Below are positions 5,101 to 62,671 of a stretch of DNA of 64,000 nt, piece after piece; within the stretch, counting starts at the first letter, position 1; each line of letters starts with the position of its first letter. The notes below the pieces were generated by a model. It was not told the origin of the DNA, did not search any database, and saw only the letters and a program-made list of their open reading frames with translations. Both the position numbers and the translations under genes were made by a program. The stretch covers positions 1,736,001-1,800,000 of the forward strand of contig NW_026782064.1 of the NCBI RefSeq assembly GCF_031769215.1, read 5' to 3'. Source of the DNA: Ylistrum balloti (taxonomy: Eukaryota).

Positions 5101-8071
5101 GTGAGCTCCTTTAAAGAAACTGATACCTTTATGATAACCATCATTCTCGATGATAATTCATTAACCACTCCTTCCCTCTGAAAATTCATGAATAAGTTAA
5201 TTTACATATTCTCGTTCCCGTAGAAAATTCATTTTAGATGAGATTATTTATTTTATGTACCATTTGTTATTTACCACATTTTATATTTGTTTGTTTTATA
5301 GATAGTACATACCAGAACCTAAAACCACATATGAATACCGATTCAGTATTAGATACTGTCGATACAAAGTTGTAAAACTACACCACACAGCTATTTTGTC
5401 CTTCCAGAGCCTAATTTGTGGAATCTACGTGACGACTGAGGAAAATCAATATTGGCTGAAATTAATCTCAAAAACAATATTGGGAGGTGCTCAAACCCCA
5501 AAATAAATTAAAAAAAGAAACCCATTAAGTGATTTCTGACCTGATCCAGTGTCTGCCTTTAATCTCAAAGATTACATACACCAAAAGATACAAAATTTAG
5601 AATTAGAGTAGAACCAAATAATGAATTAAACTGCATCATACACATGAGATGACATATAATTTTAAAAGACATATATTTAATATATAATTGTCCTCAACTT
5701 GAAGTAAGTGGATAAAATCATTTCTTTTGTCAGAAAAGGTAAAGAAGGGGAACAGTACCTATATCGAGGAGGAGGAAGAAGAACTACGTCATATACCGAC
5801 CGAACCATGGCCGGTAACATTATCAGAGAGCCCTCGAGGGTCACCACGTCTCGGTAGATCCGGCTCGAGTCTAACTCAGGCTGGCAAGTATTAAAACACT
5901 ATATCAGAGGATTTTACTGTGAAATGATGATTTAATGTTTAAAAGACTCTTCTTGGAATGCGAAATATGTCAAATCAGTTACGTGTAACCTATACAAATA
6001 ATTTTCATTCTTTCTTGTTAAAGTTTGTATAAAATTCCTCGAATTTGTATTTTGAGTCACTTTCTTAACTCACTGGCTTTTGTTTTTGTGAACTAGATAT
6101 ATCATAATAGATAACCTTTCACCTCAGTCTAATACTACAAGATGTGTATTGTAATATTATCGTGTGTCCGACCCATTTTTACCACTAAATAAGGACAGAC
6201 AACACTGTATACTGGTACATGGACGTTGGTTTCAGATTAAGTTTATATGAACACATTTGATCAAATCGTTTAAAAGTGTGCTGGGTTACCAAACGGCTAA
6301 GGGATAAAACACCTGCTTAAAAGATCAGGGTGGGCACAGTATGTGGCACAGATAGGTCGTTGATATAGATTAGATAGATATAGCACTCCCATAGAGTTAG
6401 GCATATCGTGGTAAAATTCCAAGTGTTTACGGGTCTGATGACGTCCCTTCACAACAATAAGGCACTGGCAATTTAAAGGTGTATCTCTTCCCTACTTGAG
6501 TCAGTGTTTGTTTTCCTAGTGATAAATTCAGCTTATCACATACTTAACGTTGTACCCCAAACCTCTTCTCTTTCTATATCAATATTTATGTCCTTCTCTA
6601 AAGCTAGGGATTCAACGTGGCTGGTGTTTTGATCTTTAAGTTATAACCGTATTGACCATAACTTAATGAATTGTTTCATGGATGGTTTTTGTAAAAGGAA
6701 TAATTTAGCAAAATTATGACTTTTAAAATGAAAAGTGGTGGCCATTTAAATAAATAAAACATGAAAATACCAACATGGCAACAAAATCATAATTCAGACT
6801 CAAATTCCATAAAACTAGGGTAAAATATTAACAAAAGAAAGATTTACACGGAGACACCTAAAACAAGGAGAGGAATAGTCAGGTGTTCCGGATGAGTTGG
6901 CGTTTTCTGCTTCATCGACAACACCTGCCATGTAAGAAATGTCACATTCCCAAATGTAAACAACGGAACCAATAGGCAAACTAACGAGCATAAAATACGT
7001 CTAGTTTCATTTCAAACAAAGAAATAAACTCGATCTTTTTTGTGATTCCCTCCTCCGTATATTAATTCTTTGATTTGGACGTTTTTACGAAATACGCTTC
7101 AGTATAGTTCACAACCATATATTTATACCGCCGTATTGGAGGATGGAGGAGAAAGCTCAGAACCACAGAACGAATGCGTTCCTTTAGTGTAGAATTTGAT
7201 ATGTTGGTGTACAGTGTGGAAAAATCAAAAGTTCACATAAAAGAAATGTTGTACCTGCAGGTTCGACAGTTTCCATCATGTTTTGTAGAAATCATTCTAT
7301 TATATATCAAAGGAATATTATTCTATTATTATTTTAAGAAGTAACGCTATGTACGGGTATTTCGACAAGGTAAAACCCGTATGATATGAAGCCTATTTCC
7401 ATACTGACCATTACAACGCATTAGGAACGATCATGTATATTGATGTAATGGTTTTAAGGCTCAACTTGAGTACCATATCGTGAATCTTACTCTAAGTGAC
7501 AGATAAATTAGTCTTTTATTTAGAGAAAAGAATGTAAGGTTTACGATATGTTCATATAATATATATATATTTTTTTTCGTTTTGTTGCAGAAGTAAAATT
7601 TCCAACTTTTGTCACGGTAATTTTTTTATGTTAACATGTAAACTAGTAACCTATGTCGGAATAAATGTATAGATTTATTTCATTCAAGGTATGGTCCATG
7701 CCAATAGAAGAGGCCGTCGAATGTCACACGAATTCGAAGACCTTGAGATGAACACGAAGACGGGCAAGTTACGCGAAGCACCAAATATGGCCAAAAGTTT
7801 AATGGCGCGACGGAATCTGTATCGGCCCGCGTCAGGATCTCTGTCTCCTGAAAGAAGAAATACAAGCAGTCGCGAGAATCGGGATAGCTCTGATACGTCT
7901 TCTTCGTCTGCTGTGTCATCCTTGGAAGACCTTCACTGGATTGGAAATCCCGCGGCTACTAAATCTGTTCGGCGTGCTCGAAAAACTGTCGAGGAACAGG
8001 AATTAACATCAGAACTTCACAAACTCGCAAAATCAAGTTCTAAGAAAAAGAAGCCAAAGAAAAACTCCTGA
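2110..8071 (+). CDS. 3-exon gene of unknown function, 254 aa; join(2110..2341,5734..5883,7689..8071). Predicted N-terminal coiled coil, Glu run, Arg/Ser/Lys-rich C-terminus
   Basis: Donor AGAG|gtaag at 2341/2342. Acceptor tttcttttgtcag|AAAAG at 5733/5734. GC donor GCTG|gcaagt at 5883/5884. Acceptor ttcattcaag|GTATG at 7688/7689. All junctions are phase 1, and exon lengths 232+150+383=765 nt give one open frame joining track ORFs 2110 and 7691. Confidence 0.8.
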
Positions 8072-11000
8072 TGGATGTGCCAATCGAATGAGTAACTAGT
8101 GTGATATTTAATCTCAGAAAAGAGTGTCACAGTAACAGTTAATGATTTATTACTAATTATCAATATGAATCGATTCATTTTGTCTTGTTTAACATGATTC
8201 ACGTTGTGTTGTACGTGTTGTAAGCTAGATATATTTTCATGTTAAGAACTCCAAACCGTCCATTTTGTAAATACTCTAATGTAGTTGAAGATCAATTTGT
8301 GTTGTGTTCAAGTTGTACTTTTTGTCATTTCCACACATTGTACATGGTCACAGTGGTTTGAATTCCTGAAAAAAAAATGACAATCTTATGCAAAATTTTC
8401 ATCTTGTAAACACAAACCTGTGGTATGAAATCCTCGAATTGATTGATTGATCAACTCTCATTTTATGTAAGCGAATCGATCCTGGTACAAACTTATTGTC
8501 CTTAACAATATGACATAACAAACATGTACGTTATACATCCCATTTATTTTCAAGGTCAGATTGAAGATCATAATTTTATAAAGTAAAAACAATTCAGGTC
8601 GTATTATAGACACAAGTTTGGTACATTTGGTACATTGACTTGACACAATTTGAAATAATAAACAACTGAATGATTGCAAAAGTATATTATATGATTCATA
8701 CATGGCATGTATAAAATCATTTTGTATGGTGCATCCATGGTAAGTTTATAAATACCATTTTATATACTGGAAACGTACGATTAAAACAGACACGTATGAA
8801 TTGAGTTTAAATGAGATATTAAAATAGGAAAGAGATAAATATTCCTAGTCACTTCTTCTGGTCTTCTGGACACCTTCATAAACGTATCAATACGTGTAAT
8901 ATGATATCTTCCCCCTCTGTGACATGTTATAACATTATTGACTCCGTGTTATCATAAAGAAGTAGTGTTCACGAAAAGAAAAACGGAACGATTGATTGGC
9001 GTCTGACAAGTATCAGGCATACACAAGAGGTACATCACAGCTGATGGAACATTTTTTCTGATGCATGATTAACACTAGTTACCAGTAAACGAGCCTCCAC
9101 GTATATATTCTTTAAAATGGCTATTTCATAATCATCGCTGTTAATGTAATGATTACGAGTCTTAATCAATCTATTCACTATCGTTATAATGAATCATCAA
9201 TGGTATTTCGTCATTAAATTATGCAACGTAATGATGATATGATATTTTAGAGACTGCACATATCAATGGCGTTTAGCTGGGTTGATATCTGGGCTATACC
9301 ACACAGAATAACTTTTCTAAATTTGTTTCTTTTGGTATAATATATAGTATTTACTATTATCAAATTTTCATATTACTAATAAACAAGGCCAAAAAATGAA
9401 ATACCCCCCCCCCCCCCCCCCTTGAAACGTTTGTTGAATCGTGATGAACCGATAAAAGCAAAAACTTACTTCCTTTATCCCGTGTATTTTTACAACACTA
9501 ACCATTCAGGGTAAAGTCTTTTGTTTTTTTTAATGTAGGAGATGTTTGAATGTCATCATATAAAACGACAAAACAACGATATTTTCAAAATTTGATATCT
9601 TATTGGGGTGTTCGCGCGCATAGGTTCCAACTTTCCTCGATAGCCACTATTACACCGGTATCGTTTGACCAACGGCCAATAATTAAAGAAGTACATGTGA
9701 TATAGCTGAAAATGTTCATGACATGTTTCTTTAAAGTTTACACAATATTAATTGAAATCATCGACAAGTATTCAGATTAAAACAGCATATGGTTTGTATT
9801 CCAGTACTGTTTAGGTGAATCAACTAGAGACAATGTAAATTACTGAATATCATTAATATAACGTCAAACAGGAAGTTATAAATACAAATGAAAATGCGTG
9901 TTAACACTAGCGATATGAAACAAAAAAACAACAAACACAACAACAGCAACAACAAACCCCCAACAAAAAAAGTTTGGCAAGAGTACCTGTATTAGGTAGG
10001 TAATGGGCTCTTATTTCTCTACATGGTTTTATTTATTATTAGTATCAAATGTTTCTTTTGGAACACTTGCTTAACGATCTTAAATTTAAATTGAGTTTAA
10101 TCATGTTTAATGGCTCCATCTACAAGTATGCATTGTGTATATCCTATTGGTACGAATTCTAAGGATTGAGACTCCACCAGTGGAAGCTTTGGGTTAAAAT
10201 GATATTTCAAGATAAACTTTTATACCCTGATAGAGCGGTGAAACTCTACTTATACAGGTAATGATATTTACATACAAATATGGACATTGCAACATATTGT
10301 TATAAGCAGTAGTTAGTAACGGTAGTTAGTCCGACCTTGTGATTTATCTCCCACCCGAGGTAAACCTCTGATGGGCTATCGTGTCACTATCCTCCGATCA
10401 AAGTATACACAATAACTAGCCACAAGCAATAATATCTTTGTGAATTCTAGTGTGTGGTTTAATTGGTCACTTACCTGATTAGACCCTTTCCTTTCATCAT
10501 TGTGTGTCACTGGTATATTTTGTAAAATCATTTCTATTTAGTAATTTTATTCTTTAATTATCAATTGAAACACACTTTCATTATGACATCATGCGTCGAC
10601 ACATGATGTTGCCTGGTGATTAAATGACGAAATAGATATAAATATGGTGTTTTACCATACAATAACATAAATGCTATCACAGAATCTGAAAACCAGTGTT
10701 GTAATGTTACTAAGGTCAGGATTTAAACGAAGTAATTAGATGCATTAGTAGAGTGTTGTTAAAAGGTTTGATGAAGTGTAAGTTTAATTGTAGAAATCAA
10801 ACATTATAGATTTACTTACATTCATAATAAGTTTATTGGTAGTTAACCATTGCTTATCATCAATGCTTCCGAGAAATGATCTAGTAATGGAGATTGACCA
10901 CAGTTCAATAGCATCATGAACTCATTGCACTGCCATATAGCGGAAGGTCAACATCTGGTCAGATATGTTGGAAGCATTTATAGACATACAATATTTTCTT

Positions 11001-11526: not shown

Positions 11527-11809
11527 AATGAGTGCGGTATGATGTGGCAATTACTCTTTAACTTTATCTTACATTGCTATTTTCGTTTTAAAATGATGTT
11601 GCAATTATTATACTTTTCGGACACGTTCTTAAATATGCCTTATTTTGTTTTCATATAAATACGACGACAATGTCAACTTAAATTAAATACTCAAATATAT
11701 AAGAATATATATATATATATAGTGAAAATATCAAAAGCTCAGTGTCCGCTAAGTATATATATATATATATATAAATGATTTTTGACAAAAGAAGAAAGAC
11801 GTTACATTT

Positions 11810-11847
11810 TGCACTAGCGCTTTCACTGTATTAGATCTTCAGGTGCA
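11810..11847 (-). ncRNA. Minimal type-I hammerhead ribozyme (inverted pLTR copy)
   Basis: Exact reverse complement of the motif at 12427..12464. Confidence 0.75.
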
Positions 11848-12426
11848 TAGTAACTGTACATAATGGTGTGGCGTCACAACATGTTATCTCTTTTCTCGAC
11901 AAGAAACATCAGAAACAAAGTTACCGGAAGTCAATACTTGTCGAGAAAAGAGATGTGGAACGTGTCAACATATCATAACAGGGAATTCCTTACAATTAAA
12001 AAGTGGAAAGAAGTGGGAAGTTAAAAGCAGTATGAACTGTAAATCAAAAAACGTGATTTACTTAATCCTTTGTCCAAAATGTGGAAGTTTCTATATAGGA
12101 CAAACAGAAAACCTCCGCAAACGCGTAACATTACATCGCGAACAAATATTCCACGAAAGATATAGACATCTACCAATCAGCCGACACATAGCAGGATGCA
12201 ACGACGGCTTTTTCCAAATATTCCCCCTGTATACTTTTTCATCTGAAACCAATCGAATACAAAGAGAAGCCAAGGAGTCAGAAATTATAAACATTTTAAA
12301 ACCAGACTTGAATATTAATGTTTAACCGCATTGTAAAGTTTGCAAAATATAATTATGCCCCTTTTATATTATGACGTCATCAACAGATAACATGTTGTGA
12401 CAACACACCATTATGTACAGTTACTA

Positions 12427-12464
12427 TGCACCTGAAGATCTAATACAGTGAAAGCGCTAGTGCA
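12427..12464 (+). ncRNA. Minimal type-I hammerhead ribozyme in the PLE pLTR
   Basis: UGCAC-CUGAAGA-UCUAAUACAGU-GAAA-GCGC-U-A-GUGCA. Stem I is UGCAC/GUGCA, both core boxes are present, stem II is very short, stem III is the palindrome AGCGCU, and predicted cleavage is after CUA at 12459. This is the known architecture of PLE-associated minimal hammerheads. Confidence 0.8.
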
Positions 12465-12500
12465 AAATGTAACGTCTTTCTTCTTTTGTCAAAAATCATT

Positions 12501-12506
12501 TTTATT
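12501..12506 (-). terminator. Candidate polyadenylation signal (AATAAA) for the ankyrin-cGLR gene
   Basis: tttatt on the + strand at 12501..12506, about 310 nt past the distal stop and at the PLE boundary. Confidence 0.35.
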
Positions 12507-12813
12507 TATAATTTACTCGCATCTCGTCAAATCAAGTTTTTTCTATATACAGATTGTATATATATATATATAAGTTACATACACGCCTATGGTCAGGTTA
12601 TAATTAATTTATAAACATATTTTGCTAGAATTTTCTTCCAACGATTTCTCTTTTTGAAAATTTTCATGTCGATGTCATTTGAGCATCCCGCGGTATACAA
12701 TTGGAAAGTTAATTAACAGCGAGGTCTTATGTCAGAATATATATATTGAAATACCATTTCTTACTTCGTAATTTTTTAAATATACCAACGTTAATAACTT
12801 CAGACAGAAAATT

Positions 12814-15800
12814 TCACGAAGCCCTCATAATTGTTAATATCAAATTGAGAAAAACCCTCCTCCTCCTTCTAATGGTGTGAATTTTTCTTCTCATGGCCTC
12901 TTGGTCACCTGGCCGACGAAATTCATATATGAATTCAAACAAGTTTTGTTGGGGAAGGAAATACACAAGGAGTTATCCGGTGTCATTAACACTCTTGAGA
13001 AATTCGAATATCTTGATTGTCAAGTCCACAGTGGTCTGCCACCGTTCTTCATCTGATATCTGATTCAAATCTTCATCGCATAGTTCTGGTTGTTTTCCAA
13101 TCAAATGAAACAAAGCGTTCTTCAACATGTAACTTGTTATATCCTCATTGGCTTCATAAATAGGATCAGTGGTTTCACTTTCTTCGTCGTTATCTGTATC
13201 ATACGATAGATCGGAAATATTAGATGAACCGTCCGAGGAGGCAACATCGGATAAATCCGATTTCAATAAAGACCCGGAGGTTGTCTGCATTGCGTTAGTT
13301 GCTTCGTCCATTTCCAAGATATTTTCTTCATCAGTGCCAGACGCCTCTTTCAATGATCTCACGAGATCACAGCATTCATCGTATTCACCTGGATCAAAAC
13401 GAACATCTTCACACTGTGTAATTTCCACTGCATCCCTAGCATACAGTTCTTTAAAGAAATCTGAAGTAAACCTCACCTTAGGACATTGACTTCTTATAAT
13501 TTTCGCCAATCTGTAACTCTCTCTTACAAAGTTCGGTAAGGATTCCAGGAACGAAACTTCCATTGGTGCACATGACAGTCGAAGGAGACTATCAAAATAA
13601 TCCCGTGTGTCACTGTCGTAGATAATTTCTGTTCTCGACAAATTCACATCTTCTATTTGAAAGGTGTCTATGGTTTTTGGTGAAATATCTTCTGGGGGTT
13701 GTAACAGCAGGAAGTGTCCTGCTTCAATAGCCATATTCTCTAATGGAATACGACTATTGTCTCTCTTGGAGAAACTAACAAAATTGTTGACTACACGTAT
13801 GGCAGGGACTAAATCGATACTGATTTTGAGACCTTTAAAGAGTCGACCAATCCATAAAATTTGAAAATTCAGGACAGCCATATGGTCAAAGCCATTTTCC
13901 TCATCTTCACTGGCATAAAGGATTTGCGTATCCTGCCATAACTCTTTTTCGAGTAAAATCTTCCAGATTAGTCTGAAAAGTTCAATCCTAACATCATATG
14001 TTTTCAGATATCCATTTCTGTCAAAGAAAGCTTCCATTTTAGAAGGTAGGTGCGCTTCTTCTTTCAGTTTCACTCTCACAAAATTCTCTTGGCTTTGAAC
14101 ATTGTCGTTCATGATGTGACAGTGCTCGAGGATACCAGAGAGACAGCAGACAAAGTCAAATTCATCAGGGTAGCCTGTCTTGGTTCCTTCTCTCATACTT
14201 CCCATAGGTATAATGTCGTTTTTTAATCTAGGATCGCGTTGAGATATTCGTTTTGATAGCCTTTTTATCAGGCTTTGAACAGCATCAATGACTTGGTTAG
14301 TCTCTTGGTTGTCAAACAGCTTTCCTGATCCTGGGTTAAGCAGAAGTTGTTTTGCAAGCACTTTGCCATTATATCGCTGCATCTCCAAAAGTTCAGTGTC
14401 ATTTTCCGCTTTGACGAAGTCTTCATAGTTTATGATCAGTTGATTACCAGGCCAAACATTTCTTTCGGAAAAGTTGTGTCGTTGATATATGACTTCGACT
14501 GATCCTTTCTGTCCTTCTGCTTCTAGGCTGCATGATTCTATGTTGTGTCCCTTTAAAAAGTCATATATTTTTGTATAGCCTAACAACTCAGCCAGTTTGA
14601 CGGGAGTACGGTTTTCTTCGTCTGCAAGCGAAGTATTTCCTCCTACTCTTACGAACGTTTCTACCATATTGATATCATTCATCCACACTGCATAATGGAG
14701 AGCGGTGGACCCATTTTTATCACAAGCATTGACACTGCATCCTCTAAGCAACAACTCCTCTATCGCTTTAAGATTTCTTTGAGCTTGTAAATTCATCATA
14801 GCGTTACGTCCAAATTTGTCTGTAATTGTTACCTCAGCACCGGCATCACAGATTAAAGATATTTGTTTCACTGATCTTGCCCAAAATATTGGCGTTAGGC
14901 CAAATTCATCCTGAAGATTTGTGTTGGCGCCCCCATCTAGTAGGATTCTGCATACACTACGTCGGTTACCGATGATTTCCGTCGCCATTACCCGATGAAG
15001 AGGTGTCCTCCCCAGACTATTGGGTTTGTTAATATTTGCACCAAAACGAACAAATTCTTGAAAGATATTCAAATCAAAATGGCTAGACCCAAATAAAAAC
15101 CTCAGAAAAGGTGTTTCGCTGTCCTCAGCTTCCATATTGACGATATTACTGATAGATCCAGAACTCGATACCTGAAATGACTGGAACTGTTCGTTAAGAA
15201 TTTTGAACAAAAGGGGTCTGTCACTGCCTTGGCGCCTTATGTAAGACAGCAGGAAATTGTTTCCGTTTGCATCTTGCAACTCAAATTCAAAATCTACACT
15301 TTGATTCAAAAGTGCAGATAATATTATTTCCGGTTGAAATTCGTGTTCTGCCGCCATATGTAAAGCCGTCTGCCCTTTTGTGTTGGTGATATTGACATCA
15401 ACACCAGCTTCAATCAGCATATTTATAGCTCTGCTCCAAAATTCACCATCATTTTCGTCTTCATCAAAGGTCATTAAAGCATGTAAACATGTGTTCCCAT
15501 CTTCATCTTGTACGTTTACCAGTGTTCCTGGTAATTGCAAAATTGTTTCCATCTTGTTGAAATCGCCTCCGTAACATACATAGTGCAGTGGTGTCCTTAA
15601 CCATTTATTTAAGCAGTTTAAGTCAGCTCCAGCCCTGAGCAGTATTTCCATGACCTCATGTTCGACTGTGTCCTGCGTGGCGTAGTGAAGAGCGCTTTCC
15701 CCATCGGAGTCCTGTATATTAACAAGTGCATCATGATCAAGCAGCAACTGCACCATATGAAAATCACTGTTTTGTATCGCTATGAGCAGAGGGGAAGGGT

Positions 15801-15906
15801 CATCATCACATTTTCGGTTAGCTGAAGTACCGGACTGTAGAAGAGATTGAACGCCTGTGTGATCCTGGAATTGTATTCTGCAAAGTAATTCGTTCTTCCA
15901 AGGCAT
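12814..15906 (-). CDS. Intronless ankyrin-repeat / cGAS-like receptor (cGLR, Mab-21 nucleotidyltransferase) fusion. 977 aa to the TAA at 12973..12975; the frame continues 52 more codons to TGA 12816..12814
   Basis: About 12 ankyrin repeats (e.g. GESALHYA, GQTALHMAA, GRTPLHRV, GSTALHYAV). These are followed by IIPMGSMREGTKTGYPDEFDFVC and SIDLVPAI (GS motif and E-x-D...D triad) and ITSYMLKNALF. The first ATG is at 15906; the track start at 15936 is TTG. Confidence 0.9.
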
Positions 15907-16235
15907 AGTGAATATGTCACAAGTGCACGTATCCAACCTGTTTGACCTAGTTTAATGTGACAGAAACATAAGATCAGATTGACTTACATTGTTCGCTGCG
16001 AAGTTTCCCCATACGTCAGGTATCTGTGTAAGAAAAATTGTGACAAATCAAATATAAGTAGTAATATCAAAGGCAAGGTTTAGTGACAATGTTCTGAAAT
16101 GTGATATAAAATTAGAGAATTATCAAAAAAATTAGATTCAATCATAATTACTCTCGCTGAAATAAAGTGATATAAACAAGTATCTTATAGCTATCCATTC
16201 TGTCCATATTTATCAAATCATTCCTTTTGATTATT

Positions 16236-16514
16236 NNNNNNNNNNNNNNNNNNNNNNNNNNNNNNNNNNNNNNNNNNNNNNNNNNNNNNNNNNNNNNNNN
16301 NNNNNNNNNNNNNNNNNNNNNNNNNNNNNNNNNNNNNNNNNNNNNNNNNNNNNNNNNNNNNNNNNNNNNNNNNNNNNNNNNNNNNNNNNNNNNNNNNNNN
16401 NNNNNNNNNNNNNNNNNNNNNNNNNNNNNNNNNNNNNNNNNNNNNNNNNNNNNNNNNNNNNNNNNNNNNNNNNNNNNNNNNNNNNNNNNNNNNNNNNNNN
16501 NNNNNNNNNNNNNN
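16236..16514. other. Assembly gap (279 N)
   Basis: Run of N. Confidence 1.
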
Positions 16515-17116: not shown

Positions 17117-20102
17117 CCGCTATTGTTACAAAAACCTACAGGTATACACACCGGCTTGTTATTTTCAGTAGGCTCCCTTTAGCTTTAGAAAACACTAGAA
17201 CGCAGATATGCCAGTGGTGAATAGTCGTATTAATACGTTTGAAATAAACCGTCCTTCATAATATCAAAAGATTACTTGATGAACATTCCATTGTCCAGCT
17301 TTTAAAGCATATTTATATAGTTGAAAGCTTTATTTTTATGATAATTATTTTCTCGTTGTTTTTACGCAAAGTGAAGTTCTTTGGTTCGTCGTGTTTTTTT
17401 TTCTTTCCCGATTTAAAAAAAAAAAAAACAATCTAGCTCCACCCCATTTGGTGTCAAAAGGAAAACGCCACCTTGTGGCGGATGTTTTTGGATTTCCTTT
17501 TTTTCCTTTTTGTCTGTTACGTATACCCGTGGTGTGTGCATCGCTGTCATTCTATCGTGCCCAACAACGGACTTTAAAATCATAAAACATTAAGATATGT
17601 TACCATATACACTAAAAATAACACGAACGAATAATAATTTTATCAGGGCAAACCTGTTATTTTATGTTTTTACACATTTACACGTTAACGTCTGACTGAA
17701 CCATATAAAAACGTTGTTTTCTTATATTTTGTGTCCGACTTACGATTACAGGATGGATCACTGAAAACTTGTTTCATAATAGTTTAACGCTTAACTAAAC
17801 ACGAACACTTGTGTGTGTTTTATACCAACGTTCGTGTGTGTTCACCTAGTAACTATTACGCTCTACACATCTAGGCAGCTTATCAACCCGATAAATGATA
17901 TAATACAAAATACCTGGAATACCTTCCGACAACTTCCATCTGTATTGTCATACATAACAGGTATTTATGTAATCAGAGAATAACCTTGAAAGATATCATA
18001 ATTGATCAACGAATACACAAAAACTTGTTCAAGCTTTGTTTCCGGAGAGAGTGTGAGATATTATGAAACTGAATGATTCTTTATGAAAAATGATATACAC
18101 CTGTGTATGGCTACCTGCCAGGTAACATAACAAGGCAATTGTGATTGAAAATGACTGTATTTTCCGATTGTTCGTTTTAAATGCGAACAATAATTTTTCT
18201 TGTTAACATGAGTCTTAGGGGAAGCAATTTCATAAACCACGGTTTTACAAAAGTGGTGACAAACTAACAAAGGTTTTGTTGTGGTTGTATGTAGTCAGGG
18301 TAAGATTACTCAATGTCAGGTGTTTTGTTACTTTTTGCACGTGCCATATGATTGCTGTCGTACGCATATGCATTACACATTGTAGAAAACAATGCAGGAT
18401 ATCAAGGTAACACTTAGTATCTCATAATTTATATTCCATCGTTCACATGAAGGATAGACTGTTTTTTGTCATAAGACTTATTTATAAAGGTTCCCTTCAG
18501 ATCTCATTTGTGAAGGATATTGGTGACATAGAAATTGATCCCATTAATTACGCGTGCCTTGATATATACCGAGAACATCACACTTCTATCAAACAATAAT
18601 TGCTTAAATGTCTGATATATCATCCCGACTCGACATGCTTGATCAGGTTTCAGAAATGTCAAGACAGCAAGATTATTTATCTGTAACAATTAATTTGATA
18701 CCATCCTCATTTTCTTTTTTCTTTTGTTCCGACACTCAACTACTTTCCTGGTCTTGTTTGGGTCCCTGTCATTACTACAGGTGTAGCTTAAATCAACATT
18801 TGATAAGTCGTGATTGGTAACATAAACACAGACTCTCGGTCTCAACACCTGTATACAAAATGTACCGATACCGGTATCAGTGGTACCTATTACTTTTGAT
18901 ATGATGTAACGTATAAGAAAATGATAGGAAGATTTTCCACACTAACCATGAACTGTTACAGTATTTCGTATCTGTATAATATATTAAATAGCGATTTCTT
19001 CTGAGGGATAATTCTTTATTCACTGTCAACATTAACTTTTTTATCTAAAACAGAGACGTGACAATTTGACAATGTTATAAGCGGCGAATTGCGCGTAAAC
19101 AAAATCAACATACTTTTTTGTGATATATCCGTTATGTTTGACATGCTACTTTCTTTGCCTGTACATAAATATTGCACATGGTTTTGCAAACTTTGTAGTT
19201 ATTATTAATGTAAAGTACATAAATTCATATATGCTTGTAGGTGTTATATCACCTTTTATTGGTCATGACACAGACATGTAGCTATTTAATTCCTTATATG
19301 TGTTGTTTACATCAATACTGAGATAAATTCTTAGACTTAGGCTACGTTCACAATGGTTACTGATGTTTATATTTACTCCCATCCGTGTACGAAGATAAAT
19401 GTCTGCAGGTAAGACGGCTGGAGGAACAAAGACAACTTTAATAAGACGAGAAATTGGAGAAAATAATCTTTGTAATGTATATGGTTTAAAATGTTAAGAA
19501 GATGTATATCTAAGAGATAGGACATCAGATTAGTTCACACAATTCAGCATTTCTCCATTCAACCGTATCAATGATCCTGGTGACGTATTTTATAGCTTAT
19601 TACACAGAAACACATTGTACAATTTTTGTGATGATTTTAATAAAATTATAATAACATAAAAACGTACATGTACATTCTTTGAATGTAAAACCACTCTTAT
19701 AGCCAATCAATCAATAGAAATTACACCACAGAACATGCAACTCATCACCAACTACAAATACGCTTATAATTTTATTACGAAACTATTGATAAAACAAAGT
19801 TTAAACATAGAAATACACTAATGTCTTACAGGCTCAGACAGACAGTCTCTGTAGACAAAGTATGTAGTCGTTAAACCGGGAACAAAAGAGCACACAATAC
19901 GTAGATTTTATTTGTTTTCGCGAGTGATGACTTGATCAACACTATAAATATTTACAGTCGTCTCCATACAGAATACGTCAATGAATTACCTTCACCTGTT
20001 GGTGAATTGCAATTGTTATCACAGACAAGTGTTCTATTGACAACAAAAACACATTCATCAAAACACAATAGCATTTTGGTTTCATGTAGGAGGTGTGAAG
20101 TG

Positions 20103-21057
20103 CTATTTCTTTTTGACCGTTTTTGCTGTATAGCTAGACTCGGACGCTATCCTCTCACGAGTCAATTTCGTATTTGATGACAACTTCGAAGTTAGGTTTT
20201 CAGATTCTGCCCTACGGAAGACATGTTTCTTTGCCTGTCCATCCGTTCGCGTCGACGCTGTTTCCCCTGCTGCCATGTTCGATCTCGAGTTAGTCCGACT
20301 GGAGGTGAAACTGCGTTGTTTCTGTGACAACGCTTTGCGTGGTTTCCTTATAGATGGTACTTCGTCAGCTTCTTCGTTCTCCTCCTCGGGAATTTGCCCT
20401 GATTTTGACTTGAGATGTACAGGTAATCTTAACTGTCCAGATGATGTCTGATCTAAATCCTCGAACTCGATCGACTTCCTTCTGCCCCTTGCTTTTGTTG
20501 TTTTCTTGGCTATTGTTAAAATAAAAGTACAATGAGAAAAAACTTATCTATTCATAGTTATAATTGTCCGTAATTTTGACCAATCAATTCGAAGAAAATG
20601 TTTTCTTGTATAGAGTAACTAATAATTAATCTTGAGAAATAAAGGTTTCTACAAAGTATTTAAACAAAAGACTAGCTAATGAAGTCAACCGTGTTATAAT
20701 GAACATCAAGCTCAACACACATTATTGTTTCTTAAATAAACAGATTTTTAGGGCAGACACTGTTCTTACGTATATCAATATATTATCGTTCTCTTTACTA
20801 ATTTCTCTATTATTAACAGATATTATCACAGCCACGATTATAAAGCATGCTGTCACTGGATTATTATTAACGAACACTTTTACAGAAAAAGTTACGTATC
20901 ACGCAAACCTTTATTTGCTTGTTAAACCAATCTCAAACAAACCTTTGTTAGATTCCACCATCTTCATCATTTCTTTTGCAAAGCCAACATTGTGTTTCTT
21001 CCAGAATTTTATGAGATCTTTAAAATTTTCGTCCTCTTCTTCTTCTACAATGTCCAT
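20103..21057 (-). CDS. Paralogue of the 2110..8071 gene, at least 173 aa; join(21057..20943,20509..20103)
   Basis: Acceptor ttccttgttttag|ATATG (exon from 21059), donor AACAAAG|gtttgt, and acceptor ttttaacaatag|CCAAG, all phase 1 and in frame with track ORF 20103..20330. Reads MDIVEEEEDENFKDL...KARGRRKSIEFEDLDQTSSGQLRLP. An upstream donor CCGTG|gtaag at 21241 may be a UTR exon, because its frame carries TAA TGA. Confidence 0.72.
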
Positions 21058-21443
21058 ATCTAAAACAAGGAAAAGAATGCGTCATTGACGTCATCTATCA
21101 CGTGATATTCCACGATATTTTACATATATGACATAGTATATGAAATCTGATTTCCTTCTCTGATAATTAATAAATGACGTCATAAAATTCGAAATTTCAG
21201 TAAAAAGAAAATCATTTTTTACCAGATTTTTAAAACTTACCACGGGTTTCCGTTTCTATCTCACTAGACACTCATTAAGATATATTGTTCTTATCGATAT
21301 CATCTACAGTGAGATCTATTTTTGGTGCTACAATGTCAATAGTGAACATATATCTTAGAGATCGCGTTTGCCATCACATGATACAGATGGAAAATGTTTT
21401 ATATTTGAACATGCAAAGGAAGTTGTATTACATCCCAATCACA

Positions 21444-22285
21444 AACCGAATACATCAGTGTGTAAACTCACAAGGCCGTGTTAACCAGACCGGATACACC
21501 AATGTGTAAACTCACAAGGCCGTGTTAATCAGACCGAATACACCAATGTGTAAACTCACAAGGCTGAGTTAACCAAACCGGATACTCGAATGTGTAAACA
21601 CACAAGGCTGTGTTAACCAGACAGGATACACTAATGTGTAAACTCACAAGGCCGTGTTAACCAGACCGGATACACCAATGTGTAAATTCATAAGGCCGTG
21701 TTAACCAGACCGCTTACACCAATGTGTAAACTCACAAGGCCGTGTTAATCAGACCGAATACACCAATGTGTAAACTCACAAGGCTGAGTTAACCAGACCG
21801 GATACACGAATGTGTAAACACACAAGGCTATGTTAACCAGACCGGATACACAAATGGATAAACTCACAAGGCTGAGTTAACCAGACCGGTTACACTAATG
21901 TGTAAACACACAAGGCTGTGTTAACCAGACCGGTTACAGCAATGTGTGAACACACAAGGCTGTGTTAACCAGACCGGATACACCAATGTGTAAACTCACA
22001 AGGCTGAGTTAACCAGACCGGTTACACTAATGTGTAAACTCACAAGGCTGAGTTAACCAGACCGGTTACACTAATGTGTAAACACACAAGGCTGTGTTAA
22101 CCAGACCGGTTACACTAATGTGTAAACACACAAGGCTGTGTTAACCAGACCGGTTACAGCAATGTGTGAACACACAAGGCTGTGTTAACCAGACCTGATA
22201 CACCAATGTGTAAACTCACAAAGCTGAGTTAACCAGACCGGTTACACTAATGTGTAAACACACAAGGCTGAGTTAACCAGACCGA
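21444..22285. repeat. 44-bp minisatellite, about 19 copies (aatgtgtaaactcacaaggccgtgttaaccagaccggatacacc)
   Basis: Period of 44 (aatgtg at 21501, 21545, ...). Units are directly adjacent, with no spacers. Confidence 0.95.
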
Positions 22286-23225
22286 ATTGTTAATTTAAAT
22301 TATAACAGATATAACATCGTGTAAATACGCTATACTCCGATATAAAACAGCGTCAGCACACAAACACAAGATACAACATACGTCAAACAATTTATGAATC
22401 ATTCAAAAGGAATGCGGAGAAGAAATAGATGAGATTTTCAGAAGAAAGAAATTCAGGTCTTGAAAACTGTTGTACAAAAGAAATTGAGAATGAGATATGA
22501 TATTGCCAAAAATAATAAAACCGCCGTTTGTGAAGTTATTGAATCAAGGGCTCCAACTCTGACAACAACTTCTTGCTCCGGTGTGAAAATGTTTTAAGCA
22601 GTTATAAGAGAAATTCAGATTACAAATGTGGAGCTGTATTGTATAAAGACAAGGTGGAAGATACTGATCCATTAATTAGGGAGAAGAACAGAAATATTTG
22701 AAATAACAGACGTAAATATTAGGGACGCATTTTATTTACCTATCGTTGATTTTGACTACCATTATGTAACGTCCTCGGAAATAATTCATTGGTCTCAGAT
22801 CCTTTAAACAATGTTTGTACAGGTACAACACATCTGAAGTGTTTTTGTTAAATAAACGTTATCGATCACCAGGAAAATTCAAATTCTATCAAAATGTTAT
22901 TAGTTTTCGTGTTTCCTTTATTGATAATTATACAATTAATCAACAACATTTAAATACTTTAAATGACATACAAGTCTTATCTCCAATCACAGCCGCTCTC
23001 AGGCTGGCAGTATTAATTCACCATATCAGTAGCAATACAAAACACTAAAATGTCCCGAGAGTTTTACAAAACGTCTGTTTTGAAATTTTAATGGATTTCG
23101 TATTTGTATTTCGGATAGGTAAATATTTAAACAAAGTCTCACTCCCACTTCAAAAGTAGAATAAAAGATTTTGTAAATGTCTATAAAATAAATAACTTAC
23201 TCCAATGTCCGAGTCAAGAGGGCGA

Positions 23226-26200
23226 TTAACTACACTTTCTCAGTGCTCCGCGGGTCATGAAATACATTTCATGTCCAACTTGATGTGCAGTGATATCACA
23301 TATGCCACGTGACCAGTAATAGGACTTAGGTACATGGTTCGGAACACGTGATTCTGCGTTCAATTTGTTCATATTTTGAAGGATAGCATGCTCATAGTTA
23401 TGAGTCCACAGGTATAGCTTGCTTTCGTAAACTATCTCAATGAAGTCAGAAAAATGATACTGATTCTACATTCCATCTAATGCTATGCACATTAACACAT
23501 TTTTGAGAAACACGATTTACAGGTCAACAGATTTATTAACGAACTTGCAAAGACTTGAAGATGTAAGTACGTCTTGTACTCTGTAAGTAGTTTATATACA
23601 AATGTATACGAATCATTACCTTCTCATGGTGAGTAAAATTTTATTCTATCTTGATATATCGGAATTTATAAAGATATTTCATATTTAAGTCACAAGTTTA
23701 CAGTACAAATATCACGGATTCGAACATATGTGACATGACTGAATATTACAGGGAATATCGATAGTCCACCAGAAGTACCTACCAGCTAGTAACAAAATAT
23801 GTAAATATTCGCAGACAGGAAGTGCCTGATGACACAACTTAAATTAATGGAAATCAATTTACTGTACCATATGACCACTTCATTTAGGGTACTCCTCTGT
23901 GTAACTAAGGCAACACTAATGTGACTTTCTTATTGTAAATGTGCTGAAAATGTATAGAAATAAAACACAGGTAACGGTCCATGAAAGCCTTTTATATCAA
24001 GAAAACAATAACTCGAGGACAAAATAGTCATATAACAATTTGCACTGTAAATATGGAGGACTGATTGCCATCTTCAAGAATCACCCTACTTGAGGTGGAA
24101 AACAACTAACAGATACTCATGTTTAATATCTATCAAATCATGTGGCCATTTCGTCTCTCTACTTTTCATCATTAGTAATAGTAAATCCATGCTAAAAGTG
24201 TCTAGAATATACAGAGGAGACATGTGGAACGATACCTTTCAGAAATCCATTATACGGTAAAATGGGTGAACGTTTGATAGATGATAGATAGATTTGAGTC
24301 TATCCTATTCCATCGTATAAAAACCTGGACTGATAACATTGAAAGTGCGACTGACGCACAACAAAGTTTTCCACAAAAGATATTTCCGTACTCGTCGAAT
24401 AGGACGTCAATATCCATCACTTATTTCAGTGTGTTTTTGGATTTGTTTTTCAAGATTAAAAAAACTTCCCTTTCGATCTTAGTGAGGCCAATTAGTTCTA
24501 TGAATGAAGATTTTGGCTGTGTCAGATTTATGATAAAAACGAAAACAATATTTGAGTGGGACATAAGTTTACTAATTTTGAAATTTGATGAAATTTATAT
24601 GAAGACCACCCAATCTATATAAGCAAATGTGCATTATAATACGAAGTACAGTACAAAAGTGATACAAACATAGGGTTAGAATAAGTAGTCAGAGAGTAAA
24701 TTAAGCTGCATTATACATCAGTTTCGTCCATCTAGGACTCTCCAGTGAAACCAAAGGCCTGAATTGTTGAAACCCGGGACGCGACAGAGTCAAAAACCAA
24801 AGGGAGATAATGATTAAGTACAAAATAGAATGAATTGGATAATTTTCGATATTATTTCACCTCAAGTAAATGCCTATATTCCTACTCGTGCTTCTGTATG
24901 TTATACCTATTTTACAGGGTGGAAGCGGAAATAAGACCTGTGCTTTTCCTCCTTTCATTTATTTCTCTTGGTAAACTTTGTCATTGTTTCCTCTTTCAAA
25001 TTACTACATTTGTCTCTATCCCGTGACATTGAGTTTGGGTGTAAGCACAGCCGCATTCTCGAATAGTTTTAACTGATATGAACTTATTGGACAACACAAC
25101 ATCCAATACACAGAATTATAGCCCACCAACAGCGACGTCACAGAAATTTAAAAGTCAATGTTTGTGTTTGAGTATAACACGGGAAATGCATCGCCTTTAT
25201 CTGATAGAGGTAACGCGTTTTTAAGATAGTGAACATGCTTGGCTAGTTATAAGTGAACAACAAAATGTACGCTGATCTGTAGGTTTTAGAGTTACTTAAA
25301 TACAGTTCATTATAACAGGTACAGACACGAGACCTGTTATACACGTTCTTTTATCTTGGTATGAAACAGTATTGAATTTCTTTAGTGCGAAACTAAACAC
25401 TGGCATAAAAAGTGAAATGTCATTCTCAAACTCTAACACTGATCAGGTTTTTATTTGTCACTAAGAAAGCTCTAAAGAACCAACAGGATCTTATCCTGTC
25501 ACCATGACCTAGTTCCGATCAAGTGAGTGCAATGTTCTCGTTGTTCAAATTAAACAACCCGAATACGAATGGAATCAGTGGAGGAAACTCGCTAAATATC
25601 TTAATTTAGAAAATTACGAAGCTAACAACACAAGGCAGATTGTATATAGCAACGCTCACATAAATTCGTGTGTTTTACGTCATGGAGACATCTCTAAAAG
25701 GGACAGAGCTGAGGCTACCAATTTGTATCGTTATATACCATAACTCCTTTTCTATTGACGGCATGAGAAAAATAGAACAAAGAAATTAATTACAGTGCCA
25801 CGTGCATCTTAATTAAAACACAAATTAGATGAAACGAGCGAAAATTTTGAATAAAAGAAAAAATTACATAGAAACTGAAGTACCAGGAGAGATATTAAGG
25901 ATACTGAGTCGATGACACCTTCCAGACAAGTCTTTGACATTCCATAGGGCGGGTTTGCTGATTGAAAGCTCTCCCTTTTGGTTTGGTTGTAGGGAAAGAC
26001 CGAACACTTTTGTTACACTGTTAATAAGGTGACCTTCCAAGAAAATTGAAAAAGAGTGCCTAACTATTACATGGTGTTGTGTTAAATTTCTGCAGACGGT
26101 GTAATGTTGAATGAGTCATTTTGTCATTATTGTTCAACACTATTGCATTGTTCGAACAACCCTTAGCAGACACATTGACATTCTCAATTTTGCGGAGGTC

Positions 26201-35312: not shown

Positions 35313-37536
35313 TCACTCCATTTTAGTCGGTGATCTCCTCTTGCTCGAACCTGGTCTAGTAAGATGGCAATAGCATTGTTTGTATCGAAATATTTTCAAC
35401 GAATGTGGACCGGAAAGACTAAATTCCGTCACCATTAAGTGTCCCTCTTGTCCAATTGCGCAAGTCTGAACCGCCCCAGCTTCGTCAGAAGGACCAATGA
35501 GCTGTTTCAGTAGGATCCCACGTTCGGAATACAAGTTCACTGTGTGATTGAGGGCATCTCCAATGATAAGTTCTCCCAACACATTAACACAAATACCGGA
35601 TGGCAGCATGGACAAACCTTCGCCTGTAGACATAGGATTAAACTTGTATAAAAGTTTACCACCATATGTGAAGTACTTGACACAGTTATTTACGGCATCA
35701 CTAACGATCACCTCTTCTTTGTTATTGACGCAGATGTGACAGCCAATTTTATCCCGTGCCGATCCCCCTACCGGGAAGGCATGCACCAACTTACCACCTC
35801 TCCTATACACTTCTATTGACCTCCGCACTGTAGATACAATAAGGTTGTAGTCTTTGTCACTTGCGATAGCGAAAGGTTCATCGCCTGTTGGAAACATAAA
35901 TTTGAACTGTCTCCTTTGTGAGAAAACCTGAACCCGCTTGTTTTTTTTATCTGCCACTGCCAAATCTCCATTTGGTAGTTCGGTTACTCCCATTGGTTCG
36001 TCAAACTGTCCCTGCCCAGTACCTTTGCAACCTATCTTTCGTATGAAGATACCATATTGGTTGAAGATCTGAATTCTGTGATTCATTGTGTCTGCAATCA
36101 GTATCTCACCGTCCAGTGTAACAGATAAGCCACGAGGATAGTAAAAGTCACCATCACCTCGACCCTTCATACCAATGTTAAAGAGCAGTTTGTCTGGTCT
36201 GAAATACGATGAAATTGTAATTACAAATAGTGTTTGAAGCGGCAATAAAACGTTCAGCTCATATAAGTTATCTCCCTTTAATAATAATGTTTGCATTGCT
36301 TGGTTCGTCGAGTACTAGAAATTCTCTCTCAAATATTTCAGTTATGCTATGCACATCAACAGCAATGAGAAATCGACTCAAATACACATTGTGTAATGAT
36401 GAGATTTTTGTTCAAGGAATACACATGGTACATGGGTCCCAACCTAGAGGTTACTGCACACGAGTACCTCGTGATGCCCCCTTTTTCGATTGTAATGTAC
36501 CAGGGTTATGAATTTGGTGTGCTATTAAACCTAAATGTCCTTATCTTCCGTTCGTGCCTATGATTTTTTGTCGATCTTGGTCAATGAAAGTATTCTGCAA
36601 AATTTACTCTACAGTGCCCAATAAAATGAGTTCAATCTACTCCTTTTACCATGCTTATGCTTCACTGCCCTCCTAATGTGGTGTAACTTTTGATGGGCTA
36701 AATATCGCGATTTCTCTTACTAAAGCTACAATGCTATGTTGAATGCACTCACTGTATATGTTTTGCTTATTTCGCTGAAGTGTACTCTCTACAGTGGAAT
36801 ATTGGTATAGCTTGTATGTTACTGGAGGCTAAGTTCAATATCAAATCGTTATAAGGAGTGATTTTTGACTGTCGGCATGCTCACATGGCTGTTGTGGAGT
36901 GACCTCCATACCAGGCCATGCCGTTCTACAGAGTGGGTCCTAATTAGAGGTCTGACTGTTGGTATACTTACGCGGCGGTTCCCTGTGGTGTGAGCTCCTT
37001 ATCCTGGTTATGGAGGTAGTTGACACTTCTGTACACTTGGCCAAGCCCATGTGAGAACATCCATGCTTCCCAGTCTTTCTTCTCCGTCGAATCCTTTACG
37101 CTCTCCATTCGACAGTCGTGAGCTGTAATTGTGTCAGAAGGAAGTAAGTATTGTTCCTTTAGATCATGAAATATATCGACTTAACCCGGTAACACCATTT
37201 TTTCTAAACGACTTATTTTAGGTTGACAATAAAATTGACAAAAACAACCAATATGTCAAGATAATTATTATCCAAACACAAAATCAATATAACTAGGGCA
37301 AATAGGAACTTTAAAATGTTATACACGAATAAGACATTGTCAGAAATGGAAAAACCAAGATAATATAAAGGAGAAAAACTAACCACCCTACAAATATTCT
37401 TACATCGCGGTCTGCGGCCGAAGATGTGTGGAGCGCTGTCCCTGTATATTTCTCTGTAGGTGGTGATGGGGTAGCGTTGTTCTGGTGACGTGTAACCATG
37501 ACCGTACAGCCGATACCGGGAAAGGTAGTCAACCAT
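35313..37536 (-). CDS. NHL-repeat beta-propeller protein, 389 aa; join(37536..37404,37122..36972,36198..35313); no RING, B-box or coiled coil seen
   Basis: NHL repeats include GDFYYPRGLSVTLDGEILIADTMNHRIQIF and GQFDEPMGVTELPNGDLAVADKKNKRVQVF. Splice sites CGAT|gtaaga, tacag|CTCAC, CCGC|gtaagt and tttcag|ACCAG have matching phases (133+151+886=1170 nt). Confidence 0.85.

Positions 37537-53311: not shown

Positions 53312-62671
<9,360 letters not shown>

What the first reader, a model, noticed from the sequence alone, without database searches (positions are those of the whole stretch)
12814..15906. Ankyrin-array/cGAS-like receptor fusion: candidate innate-immune sensor with a protein-sensing module
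About 450 aa of ankyrin repeats (~12) are fused to a nucleotidyltransferase with the full GS...DEFD...D signature, so apart from the late stop it looks catalytically competent. Expanded cGLR families, including accessory-domain fusions, are known in bivalves, so the class is not new. To my knowledge the ligand and product of ankyrin-fused members are not established. A long ankyrin solenoid suggests activation by a pathogen or host protein rather than nucleic acid, signalling through a cyclic dinucleotide to STING (inference).
Basis: partly seen in the sequence, partly recalled or inferred. Interest (0 to 1): 0.8.

Follow-up and report, generated by a model that had tools for sequence, protein, structure and literature searches.

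The report
Scallop ankyrin-fused cGAS-like receptor gene
This is a scallop innate-immune gene of an already catalogued type, a cGAS-like signalling enzyme with a long ankyrin-repeat front end; its "late stop" is carried by the reference copy but not by four other sequenced samples.

Summary
On the minus strand, 15906-12814 is one uninterrupted coding exon: about 10-12 ankyrin repeats, a helical linker, then a cGAS/Mab-21 nucleotidyltransferase with the active-site residues intact (G569-S570, E582/D584, D698).

The fold is clearly cGAS-like. The window model's top Foldseek hit is oyster Cv-cGLR1 (E 9e-11), and the ortholog model aligns to mouse cGAS at Z 28.5.

The gene is the positional, single-exon ortholog of Pecten maximus LOC117327960 and of Mizuhopecten and Argopecten genes. 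It aligns end to end with a Mytilus ankyrin-cGLR. Pairwise dN/dS is 0.2-0.3 in both halves.

The TAA at 12973-12975 replaces a conserved Glu and removes 52 residues that are confidently structured in the ortholog model. Contigs of four other runs from two studies read GAA there and give an open 1030-codon frame. The stop is therefore a variant private to the reference, or a base error, not loss of the gene.

The enzyme half is acidic (pI about 5) and has no Zn-thumb motif, which fits a ligand other than nucleic acid. Ligand, product and expression remain untested.

Ankyrin-cGLR fusions were already listed by Li et al. 2023, so this is a new member of a known kind.

The parts
12814..15906 (-). 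Whole orthologous coding sequence of the ANK-cGLR gene. It is a single exon of 1030 codons, with an in-frame TAA at codon 978 in this copy.
14542..15837 (-). Ankyrin-repeat array, aa 24 to about 455. About 10 repeats are supported, up to 12-13 by spacing.
   Evidence: Pfam Ank_2 3e-45, Ank_4, Ank, Ank_5; 8 repeats by self-HMM; Ank in aa 328-398
14287..14541 (-). Linker with the N-terminal helical extension that leads into the NTase spine helix (aa 456-540).
   Evidence: AF2 model: helices 2-31 and 42-65 of the 485-aa piece
13417..14286 (-). cGAS/Mab-21 nucleotidyltransferase core (aa 541-830).
   Evidence: Pfam PF03281 24.7 bits; PDB profile hit 8gjy cGLR1 at E 8.7e-7; Foldseek 8gjw at E 9e-11
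14155..14202 (-). Active-site motif G569-S570 ... E582-F-D584.
   Evidence: invariant or near-invariant in the family alignment; aligned to the same motif of solved cGLR1
13813..13815 (-). Third catalytic Asp, D698, in ISIDLVPA.
   Evidence: invariant; aligned to IDVDLVPAIR of 8gjw
13132..13416 (-). Acidic, Ser-rich insert predicted to be disordered (aa 831-925). It is greatly expanded in the Mytilus relative.
   Evidence: pI 4.05; pLDDT below 50; dN/dS 0.2-0.7; alignment
12976..13131 (-). First part of the C-terminal helical lobe (Mab-21_C), including ITSYMLKNALFH (aa 926-977).
   Evidence: orthologs hit PF20266
12973..12975 (-). In-frame TAA replacing the conserved Glu (GAA). Four other runs read C at + strand position 12975.
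12814..12972 (-). 52 codons after the stop that are still open and conserved (YFLPxQN loop plus terminal helices), followed by the orthologous TGA stop.
   Evidence: dN/dS 0.24-0.30; structured in the ortholog model at pLDDT 83-97

Best explanation
Shown: 15906-12814 (minus strand) is a single-exon gene of a pectinid scallop. It encodes an N-terminal ankyrin solenoid joined by a helical linker to a cGAS-like receptor (cGLR) nucleotidyltransferase with a complete catalytic triad. It is the syntenic 1:1 ortholog of Pecten maximus LOC117327960, Mizuhopecten LOC110449824 and an Argopecten gene. It is homologous from end to end with a Mytilus ANK-cGLR, so the fusion probably predates the scallop-mussel split. 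Both halves are under purifying selection. The TAA in the window is carried by the reference haplotype only (or is a base error). Other samples of the same or a very closely related species encode the full 1030-aa protein.

Inferred: the intact protein is an innate-immune sensor enzyme. In the resting state the NTase is inactive. A non-nucleic-acid ligand, most likely a protein or cationic molecule engaged with the help of the ankyrin array, repositions the spine helix that the array is tethered to. The ordered active site then makes a cyclic di- or oligonucleotide that scallop STING receptors read. The reference allele lacks the last two helices and the conserved YFLP loop of the C-lobe, so it is probably a null or unstable variant.

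The confidence of 0.6 is for the whole statement. The shown part alone (identity, orthology, allele-specific stop) I put at about 0.95.
For: Architecture and motifs.

cGLR fold: the profile against PDB gives cGLR1 8gjy at E 8.7e-7 and cGAS at 3.7e-5, with the GS/DEFD/DLVPA motifs aligned. Foldseek on the window model gives 8gjw Cv-cGLR1 at E 9e-11. VIA-align on the ortholog model gives Z 28.5, rmsd 3.2 A over 328 residues against mouse cGAS, and Z 26.8 against Cv-cGLR1. The Atlas look-alikes are Mab-21 clusters.

Orthology and synteny. Single-exon CDS in three other scallops. Colinear alignment from residue 1 with Mytilus P0015.

Purifying selection: dN/dS is 0.20-0.30 in the ANK part, the NTase core and the C-lobe, including the 52 post-stop codons.

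The stop is allele-specific: contigs of 4 runs from 2 studies read C at 12975, which gives GAA (Glu), and no other stop appears. The reference haplotype keeps the ancestral residue at most polarisable sites.

The lost tail is structured, with pLDDT 83-97.

Non-nucleic-acid ligand: the NTase pI is 5.1 and the whole protein 4.6, whereas nucleic-acid-sensing cGLRs have pI above 8.5 (Li et al. 2023). No H-x-CC-x-C Zn-thumb motif was found.

Scallops have STINGs: 5 in M. yessoensis and 3 in P. maximus (Li et al. Table S5).
Against: No RNA run holds the gene, so expression is unshown. No biochemical data exist for any ANK-cGLR.

An intact triad does not prove activity; Mab21L1 keeps one too, according to Li et al..

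The Pfam Mab-21 score is only marginal (22.7-24.7 bits).

The ankyrin array shows no raised dN/dS (0.20-0.24), which is not what an arms-race sensor of pathogen proteins usually shows.

One ortholog (P0004) has Gly at the first catalytic acid, and the Argopecten genome copy has a 1-nt frameshift. These hint that the gene may be dispensable in some lineages.

The four runs carry two coded organism labels and differ from the window by 0.7%. They are not the reference individual, so a base-call error at 12975 cannot be excluded.
Confidence: 0.6

Rival explanations
1. The ankyrin array is not the ligand sensor. It would be a localisation, scaffolding or auto-inhibitory module, for example tethering the enzyme to a membrane, the cytoskeleton or a signalling partner. 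The acidic NTase groove would itself bind a small cationic or other non-protein ligand, or the enzyme would be constitutively active once recruited.
For: Li et al. found acidic cGLRs (pI about 5) that were active without added ligand, and proposed a positively charged ligand. The ANK dN/dS (0.20-0.24) equals that of the enzyme, and the repeats align in register between scallop and mussel. Both fit a conserved partner rather than a variable pathogen target.
Against: Repeat solenoids fused to immune enzymes commonly act as sensor modules (general knowledge). The array is tethered directly to the N-terminal helix of the NTase, and by analogy with cGAS (general knowledge, not tested here) that helix is the element ligand binding remodels.
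Confidence: 0.3
2. The protein is a non-enzymatic Mab-21-family scaffold, like Mab21L1 or MID51, that uses ankyrin repeats for protein interactions. The conserved triad would be a relic or would bind nucleotide without making a messenger.
For: The Pfam NTase hit is marginal. Sequence identity to cGAS is only 16-18%. P0004 tolerates Gly at the first catalytic acid. Atlas neighbours include MID51- and ITPRIPL-like clusters at lower scores.
Against: G-S, D584 and D698 are invariant and E582 near-invariant across 12 family members down to 24% identity. The closest sequence-profile and Foldseek matches are oyster Cv-cGLR1 and other catalogued cGLRs.
Confidence: 0.12
3. The gene is a decaying pseudogene in this species, and the stop marks loss of function.
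For: The reference carries an in-frame TAA. 15 of 21 differences between the haplotypes are non-synonymous. The Argopecten copy has a frameshift.
Against: The frame is open in all four other runs. There is no second lesion in 1030 codons, and the post-stop codons show dN/dS 0.24-0.30. The reference haplotype is ancestral at most polarisable sites.
Confidence: 0.04
4. The TAA is an assembly or base-call error, and the reference individual also encodes Glu.
For: It is a single base (GAA to TAA). No independent read of the reference haplotype was available, and every run laid reads C at 12975.
Against: The surrounding 1.3 kb of the reference differs from the other haplotype by clean substitutions without indels (22 in 1262 bases). 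That looks like a real divergent haplotype, not noisy sequence.
Confidence: 0.3

Closest known systems
ANK-repeat-fused cGLRs catalogued by Li, Slavik et al. 2023 (cGLRs are a diverse family of pattern recognition receptors; Fig. 1C, S2A, 4C)
   Same: The architecture class is the same: a cGLR NTase with a putative active site fused to ankyrin repeats. That paper describes the class in animal genomes, names ankyrin-fused examples in the coral S. pistillata, and proposes a role in protein or ligand interaction.
   Different: I could not confirm that these scallop orthologs are in their list, because the stored tables are cut. No ANK-fused member has a reported ligand or product. Here the fusion is a conserved, syntenic, single-exon ortholog group, not a lineage-specific expansion.
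Crassostrea virginica Cv-cGLR1 (PDB 8gjw) and the cGLR1 chain 8gjy
   Same: These are the best sequence-profile and Foldseek matches. They share the GS / [D/E]-F-D / D-L-V-P-A motifs and the YF-x-P C-terminal motif.
   Different: Cv-cGLR1 senses dsDNA and makes 2'3'-cUA. This protein's enzyme half has pI about 5, carries an acidic disordered insert and has a 450-aa ankyrin N-terminus. Sequence identity is about 16-17%.
Mammalian cGAS
   Same: The bilobal NTase fold matches at Z 28.5 over 328 residues, and the catalytic triad is the same.
   Different: There is no Zn-thumb motif, the surface is acidic rather than basic, and an ankyrin array replaces the basic disordered N-terminus of cGAS (general knowledge).
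Acidic 'auto-active' cGLRs such as Pd-cGLR (pI about 5.0) in Li et al. 2023
   Same: The pI is similarly low, and a non-nucleic-acid, possibly cationic, ligand is implied.
   Different: I saw no accessory domain reported for Pd-cGLR. Its activity was shown, whereas this one's has not been.
Mytilus trossulus LOC134722963 (P0015) and other mussel ANK-Mab21 proteins (P0121-P0123)
   Same: The alignment is colinear from residue 1 through the ankyrin array, the NTase, the acidic insert position and the C-terminal motif.
   Different: Identity is only about 25%, the acidic insert is about 250 aa longer in Mytilus, and all of these proteins are uncharacterised.

Membership tests
cGAS-like receptors (cGLR; Mab-21/cGAS NTase superfamily) | Bilobal cGAS/Mab-21 nucleotidyltransferase fold | tested here: met
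   Foldseek on the window model: 8gjw at E 9e-11, prob 1.00. VIA-align on the ortholog model: Z 28.5, rmsd 3.2 A, 328 residues against mouse cGAS; Z 26.8 against Cv-cGLR1.
cGAS-like receptors (cGLR; Mab-21/cGAS NTase superfamily) | Sequence-profile membership (Pfam PF03281 Mab-21 at or above the gathering score) | tested here: inconclusive
   24.7 bits against a cut-off of 24.1 for the C-half alone, but 22.7 bits in the full protein. The family profile against PDB hits cGLR1 at E 8.7e-7.
cGAS-like receptors (cGLR; Mab-21/cGAS NTase superfamily) | Catalytic signature G-S ... [E/D]-x-[E/D] ... [E/D] | tested here: met
   G569-S570, E582, D584 and D698. They are invariant or near-invariant in 12 relatives and align to the same residues of solved cGLR1.
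cGAS-like receptors (cGLR; Mab-21/cGAS NTase superfamily) | Complete C-terminal helical lobe (Mab-21_C, PF20266) | tested here: not met
   In the window allele the TAA at 12973-12975 cuts off the last 52 residues. The lobe is complete in the alleles of four other runs and in the orthologs (PF20266 at 25.7 bits in P0001).
cGAS-like receptors (cGLR; Mab-21/cGAS NTase superfamily) | Ligand-activated synthesis of a nucleotide second messenger | not testable with these tools
   This needs a recombinant-protein assay. No paper reports one for an ANK-cGLR.
cGAS-like receptors (cGLR; Mab-21/cGAS NTase superfamily) | A STING (or other) receptor for the product in the same genome | not tested
   Li et al. 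count 5 STINGs in M. yessoensis and 3 in P. maximus. I did not search this genome.
Ankyrin-repeat proteins | Tandem 33-residue ANK repeats recognised by Pfam | tested here: met
   Ank_2 at 3.4e-45, Ank_4 at 1.8e-39, Ank at 8.2e-36; 8 repeats by self-HMM plus Ank in aa 328-398.
DNA-sensing cGAS proper | Zn-thumb (H-x5-CC-x6-C) and a basic DNA-binding surface | tested here: not met
   The motif is absent from this protein and from 9 relatives. The NTase pI is 5.1.

The most novel reading that the evidence does not exclude
The ankyrin solenoid is the true ligand-binding module, which would make this the first cGLR activated by a protein (a pathogen effector or a guarded host protein) rather than by nucleic acid. 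Because the gene is conserved as a single-copy ortholog from scallops to mussels, this would be an ancient protein-sensing branch of cGAS-STING immunity.
Probability: 0.22. Interest if true: 0.8.

Novelty: new member of a known kind. Interest (0 to 1): 0.35.

Why it matters
What the many cGLRs that ignore nucleic acids actually sense is an open question. An ankyrin-fused, acidic cGLR without a Zn-thumb could help answer it. This one is kept as a single-copy, syntenic, intron-free gene across scallops, is homologous end to end with a mussel gene, and is under purifying selection in both halves. Those properties make it a clean, easily cloned candidate for finding a non-nucleic-acid ligand.

The work also corrects the impression that the gene is broken. 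The stop is confined to the reference haplotype, so a natural intact allele can be used for experiments.

The architecture itself was already catalogued in 2023, and nothing here shows activity, so the finding is useful rather than surprising.

Tried and rejected
- **An intron hiding the stop:** rejected. There is no usable donor/acceptor pair around 12973-12975, and any splice would remove the conserved YFLP motif. The orthologs are single-exon and colinear.
- **A species-wide pseudogene:** rejected.
- **Single-sequence phmmer of the C-half against PDB:** no relevant hit. A family profile was needed.
- **Word-based homolog searches of the NTase half:** only 6 hits each, so they say little about how widespread the family is. 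I did not run the exhaustive representative search because the protein was no longer open and the operators flagged its cost.
- **Looking for the ortholog accessions in Li et al.'s tables:** no hit, but the stored files are truncated, so this is uninformative.
- **Search for "cGAS-like receptor" plus "scallop":** 0 papers.
- **RNA evidence:** no RNA run holds the gene, and all laid runs were contigs, so nothing can be said about expression or transcript ends.
- **Exact look-up of P0001:** failed. Its twin P0125 worked.
- **Neighbouring conserved exons:** no Pfam family.
- **Scan notes:** earlier notes of this scan mention other cGLR fusions (zinc-finger, TPR) elsewhere in this genome. I used them only as context and did not check them.

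Full report
**Observation.**
The minus strand carries a single long ORF from 15936 (TTG), or from the conserved ATG at 15906, to a TAA at 12973-12975. That is 977 residues from the Met. The frame then stays open for 52 more codons to a TGA at 12814-12816.

Pfam finds ankyrin families at E 1e-45 to 1e-17 over residues 24-428. The Mab-21 NTase domain sits at residues 583-738. It scores 22.7 bits in the full protein and 24.7 bits, against a cut-off of 24.1, when the C-half is scanned alone.

A repeat HMM built from the protein itself recovers 8 clear repeats. Pfam recognises further Ank signal in residues 328-398. About 10 repeats are supported, and the spacing allows 12-13. The active-site strings GSMREGTKTGYPDEFD (14155-14202) and SIDLV (13807-13821) are present.

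**Identity of the enzyme half.**
A single-sequence search of PDB found nothing relevant. A profile of six family members hit "cGAS-like receptor 1" 8gjy (E 8.7e-7) and 8gjw (1e-5), then cGAS (3.7e-5) and Mab21L1. In those alignments the GS, DEFD, DLVPAIR and YF-x-P motifs line up.

- The AlphaFold2 model of the window's 485-residue C-half has a confident core (pLDDT 88-96 over most of the NTase).
- Its best Foldseek PDB match is Cv-cGLR1 from Crassostrea virginica (E 9e-11), followed by dozens of cGAS entries.
- The model of the intact Pecten maximus ortholog domain aligns to mouse cGAS at Z 28.5 (rmsd 3.2 A, 328 residues) and to Cv-cGLR1 at Z 26.8. Both alignments cover the whole domain.
- ESM Atlas look-alikes are Mab-21 NTase clusters.
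- In a 12-member alignment reaching 24% identity, G569, S570, D584 and D698 are invariant and E582 is nearly so.

This is a cGLR by fold, profile and motif.

**Orthology and gene structure.**
The closest proteins are "Ankyrin repeat protein"/LOC110449824 of Mizuhopecten yessoensis (1054 aa, 62%), LOC117327960 of Pecten maximus (1039 aa, 63%) and a "LOW QUALITY PROTEIN" of Argopecten irradians (1039 aa, 55%). The known pectinid orthologs are 57-65% identical to one another. The window's species is therefore another pectinid lineage at a similar distance.

The P. maximus locus is colinear with the window on both sides. Conserved neighbour exons lie at about 20101-23354 and 5726-8113. The CDS is one exon in all four species. 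The Argopecten genome copy carries a 1-nt frameshift near codon 548.

A Mytilus trossulus protein of 1166 aa aligns colinearly from residue 1 through the ankyrin array, in register, into the NTase. It places the acidic insert at the same position. The fusion is therefore probably older than the scallop-mussel split (inference).

**Selection.**
Pairwise Nei-Gojobori dN/dS is 0.20-0.30 for the ankyrin part, the linker plus NTase core, and the C-lobe. It is higher, 0.2-0.7, in the acidic insert. dS is near saturation (0.8-1.6), so these are rough values. Both halves are nonetheless clearly constrained, and the ankyrin array evolves no faster than the enzyme.

**The stop.**
TAA aligns to a Glu conserved in all full-length orthologs. 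The 52 codons after it are conserved (dN/dS 0.24-0.30). In the ortholog model they form the YFLP loop, a short helix and a 27-residue terminal helix, at pLDDT 83-97. The truncation therefore removes an integral part of the C-lobe.

I laid Logan contigs of four runs on 12500-16200. The runs come from two studies and carry two coded organism labels. All four read C instead of A at + strand position 12975, which is GAA (Glu) on the coding strand. Applying each run's listed differences gives an open 1030-codon frame with no other stop.

The runs differ from the window at 20-25 substitutions and no indels within the gene. These are concentrated in the 3' third (22 in 1262 bases, against 2-3 in 2250). 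The reference therefore carries a distinct haplotype there. At polarisable sites the reference haplotype mostly keeps the ancestral residue. It is derived at A823 and at the stop.

The stop is thus a recent private variant of an otherwise healthy allele, or a base error. None of the runs is the reference individual, so these two possibilities cannot be separated here.

**Ligand inference.**
The whole protein has pI 4.6. The NTase has pI 5.1 without the insert, and the insert alone has pI 4.05. The ortholog enzyme halves have pI 4.5-5.2.

Li et al. 2023 report that dsDNA- and dsRNA-sensing cGLRs have pI above 8.5. They also report that acidic cGLRs, with pI down to 5.0, probably answer to a non-nucleic-acid ligand. 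No Zn-thumb-like H-x-CC-x-C motif occurs in this protein or in nine relatives.

By my recollection of the human cGAS sequence, the Zn-thumb site corresponds to a short loop here, and the acidic insert lies one helix further on. This was not tested.

They do not show that the ankyrin array is the sensor. The model places a helical linker between the array and the N-terminal NTase helix. By analogy with cGAS (general knowledge, not tested here), a movement of the array could be passed to the catalytic site through that helix (inference).

**What is known.**
Li et al. 2023 catalogued 3,020 cGLRs. They state that 87% are stand-alone enzymes and that some are fused to TPR or ankyrin repeats (Fig. 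1C, S2A), including coral examples (Fig. 4C). They counted 73 cGLRs and 5 STINGs in M. yessoensis, and 61 and 3 in P. maximus.

I found no paper giving a ligand or product for any ANK-cGLR. The architecture class is therefore known and the function is open. This gene is a new, well-behaved member.

**Limits.**
No RNA run holds the gene. A 279-base N run at 16236-16514 lies about 330 bases upstream of the ATG, so the promoter and any 5' non-coding exon are not readable. I left it untouched.

Noticed in passing
window 12032-12325 (+): A 97-aa ORF with a GIY-YIG catalytic domain (Pfam 6e-8) lies about 500 bases downstream of the gene's 3' end. This fits the Penelope-like element fragment that another note of this scan places at 11773-12501.
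   Followed up: partly
window 16236-16514: A 279-base run of N lies about 330 bases upstream of the ATG of the ANK-cGLR, so the promoter and 5' UTR are unreadable.
   Followed up: no
window 15907-16010 (-): Within the roughly 100 bases upstream of the ATG there is a polypyrimidine-CAG acceptor-like site followed by a GTAAGT donor-like site. These may be small 5' non-coding exon boundaries. There is no RNA data to test this.
   Followed up: no
P0004 (ENA contig, unknown pectinid), residues equivalent to window aa 581-584: This ortholog reads E-G-F-D where all other family members read D/x-E-F/M/L-D. The first catalytic acid is replaced by Gly, which may mean an inactive copy in that species or an error.
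   Followed up: no
L002:4643-4644 (Argopecten irradians CM084264.1): The Argopecten ortholog has a 1-nt frameshift near codon 548 in the genome, and RefSeq labels it LOW QUALITY PROTEIN. This is a second lineage with a lesion in this gene, or an assembly error.
   Followed up: partly
window 12585-13846 versus 13847-16096: Differences between the reference and the four other runs are very uneven: 22 in 1262 bases against 2-3 in 2250. 15 of 21 coding differences are non-synonymous. This suggests a recombinant or divergent 3' haplotype.
   Followed up: partly
window 35316-36296 (-): A 327-aa ORF with NHL repeats (Pfam 4.7e-25, six-bladed propeller type). It is probably the C-terminal exon of a TRIM-NHL-like gene.
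   Followed up: no
window 55451-55870 (-): A 140-aa ORF with a C2 domain (Pfam 1e-12). It is probably an exon of a larger gene.
   Followed up: no
window 46058-48172 (+): Three ORFs of 162-199 aa gave no Pfam family at E <= 0.01 when scanned singly. Another note of this scan calls them DUF4434-like.
   Followed up: no
window 5726-8113 and 20101-23354: Exon-like blocks 72-87% identical to the two genes that flank the ortholog in P. maximus. The ORFs tested from them have no Pfam family.
   Followed up: partly
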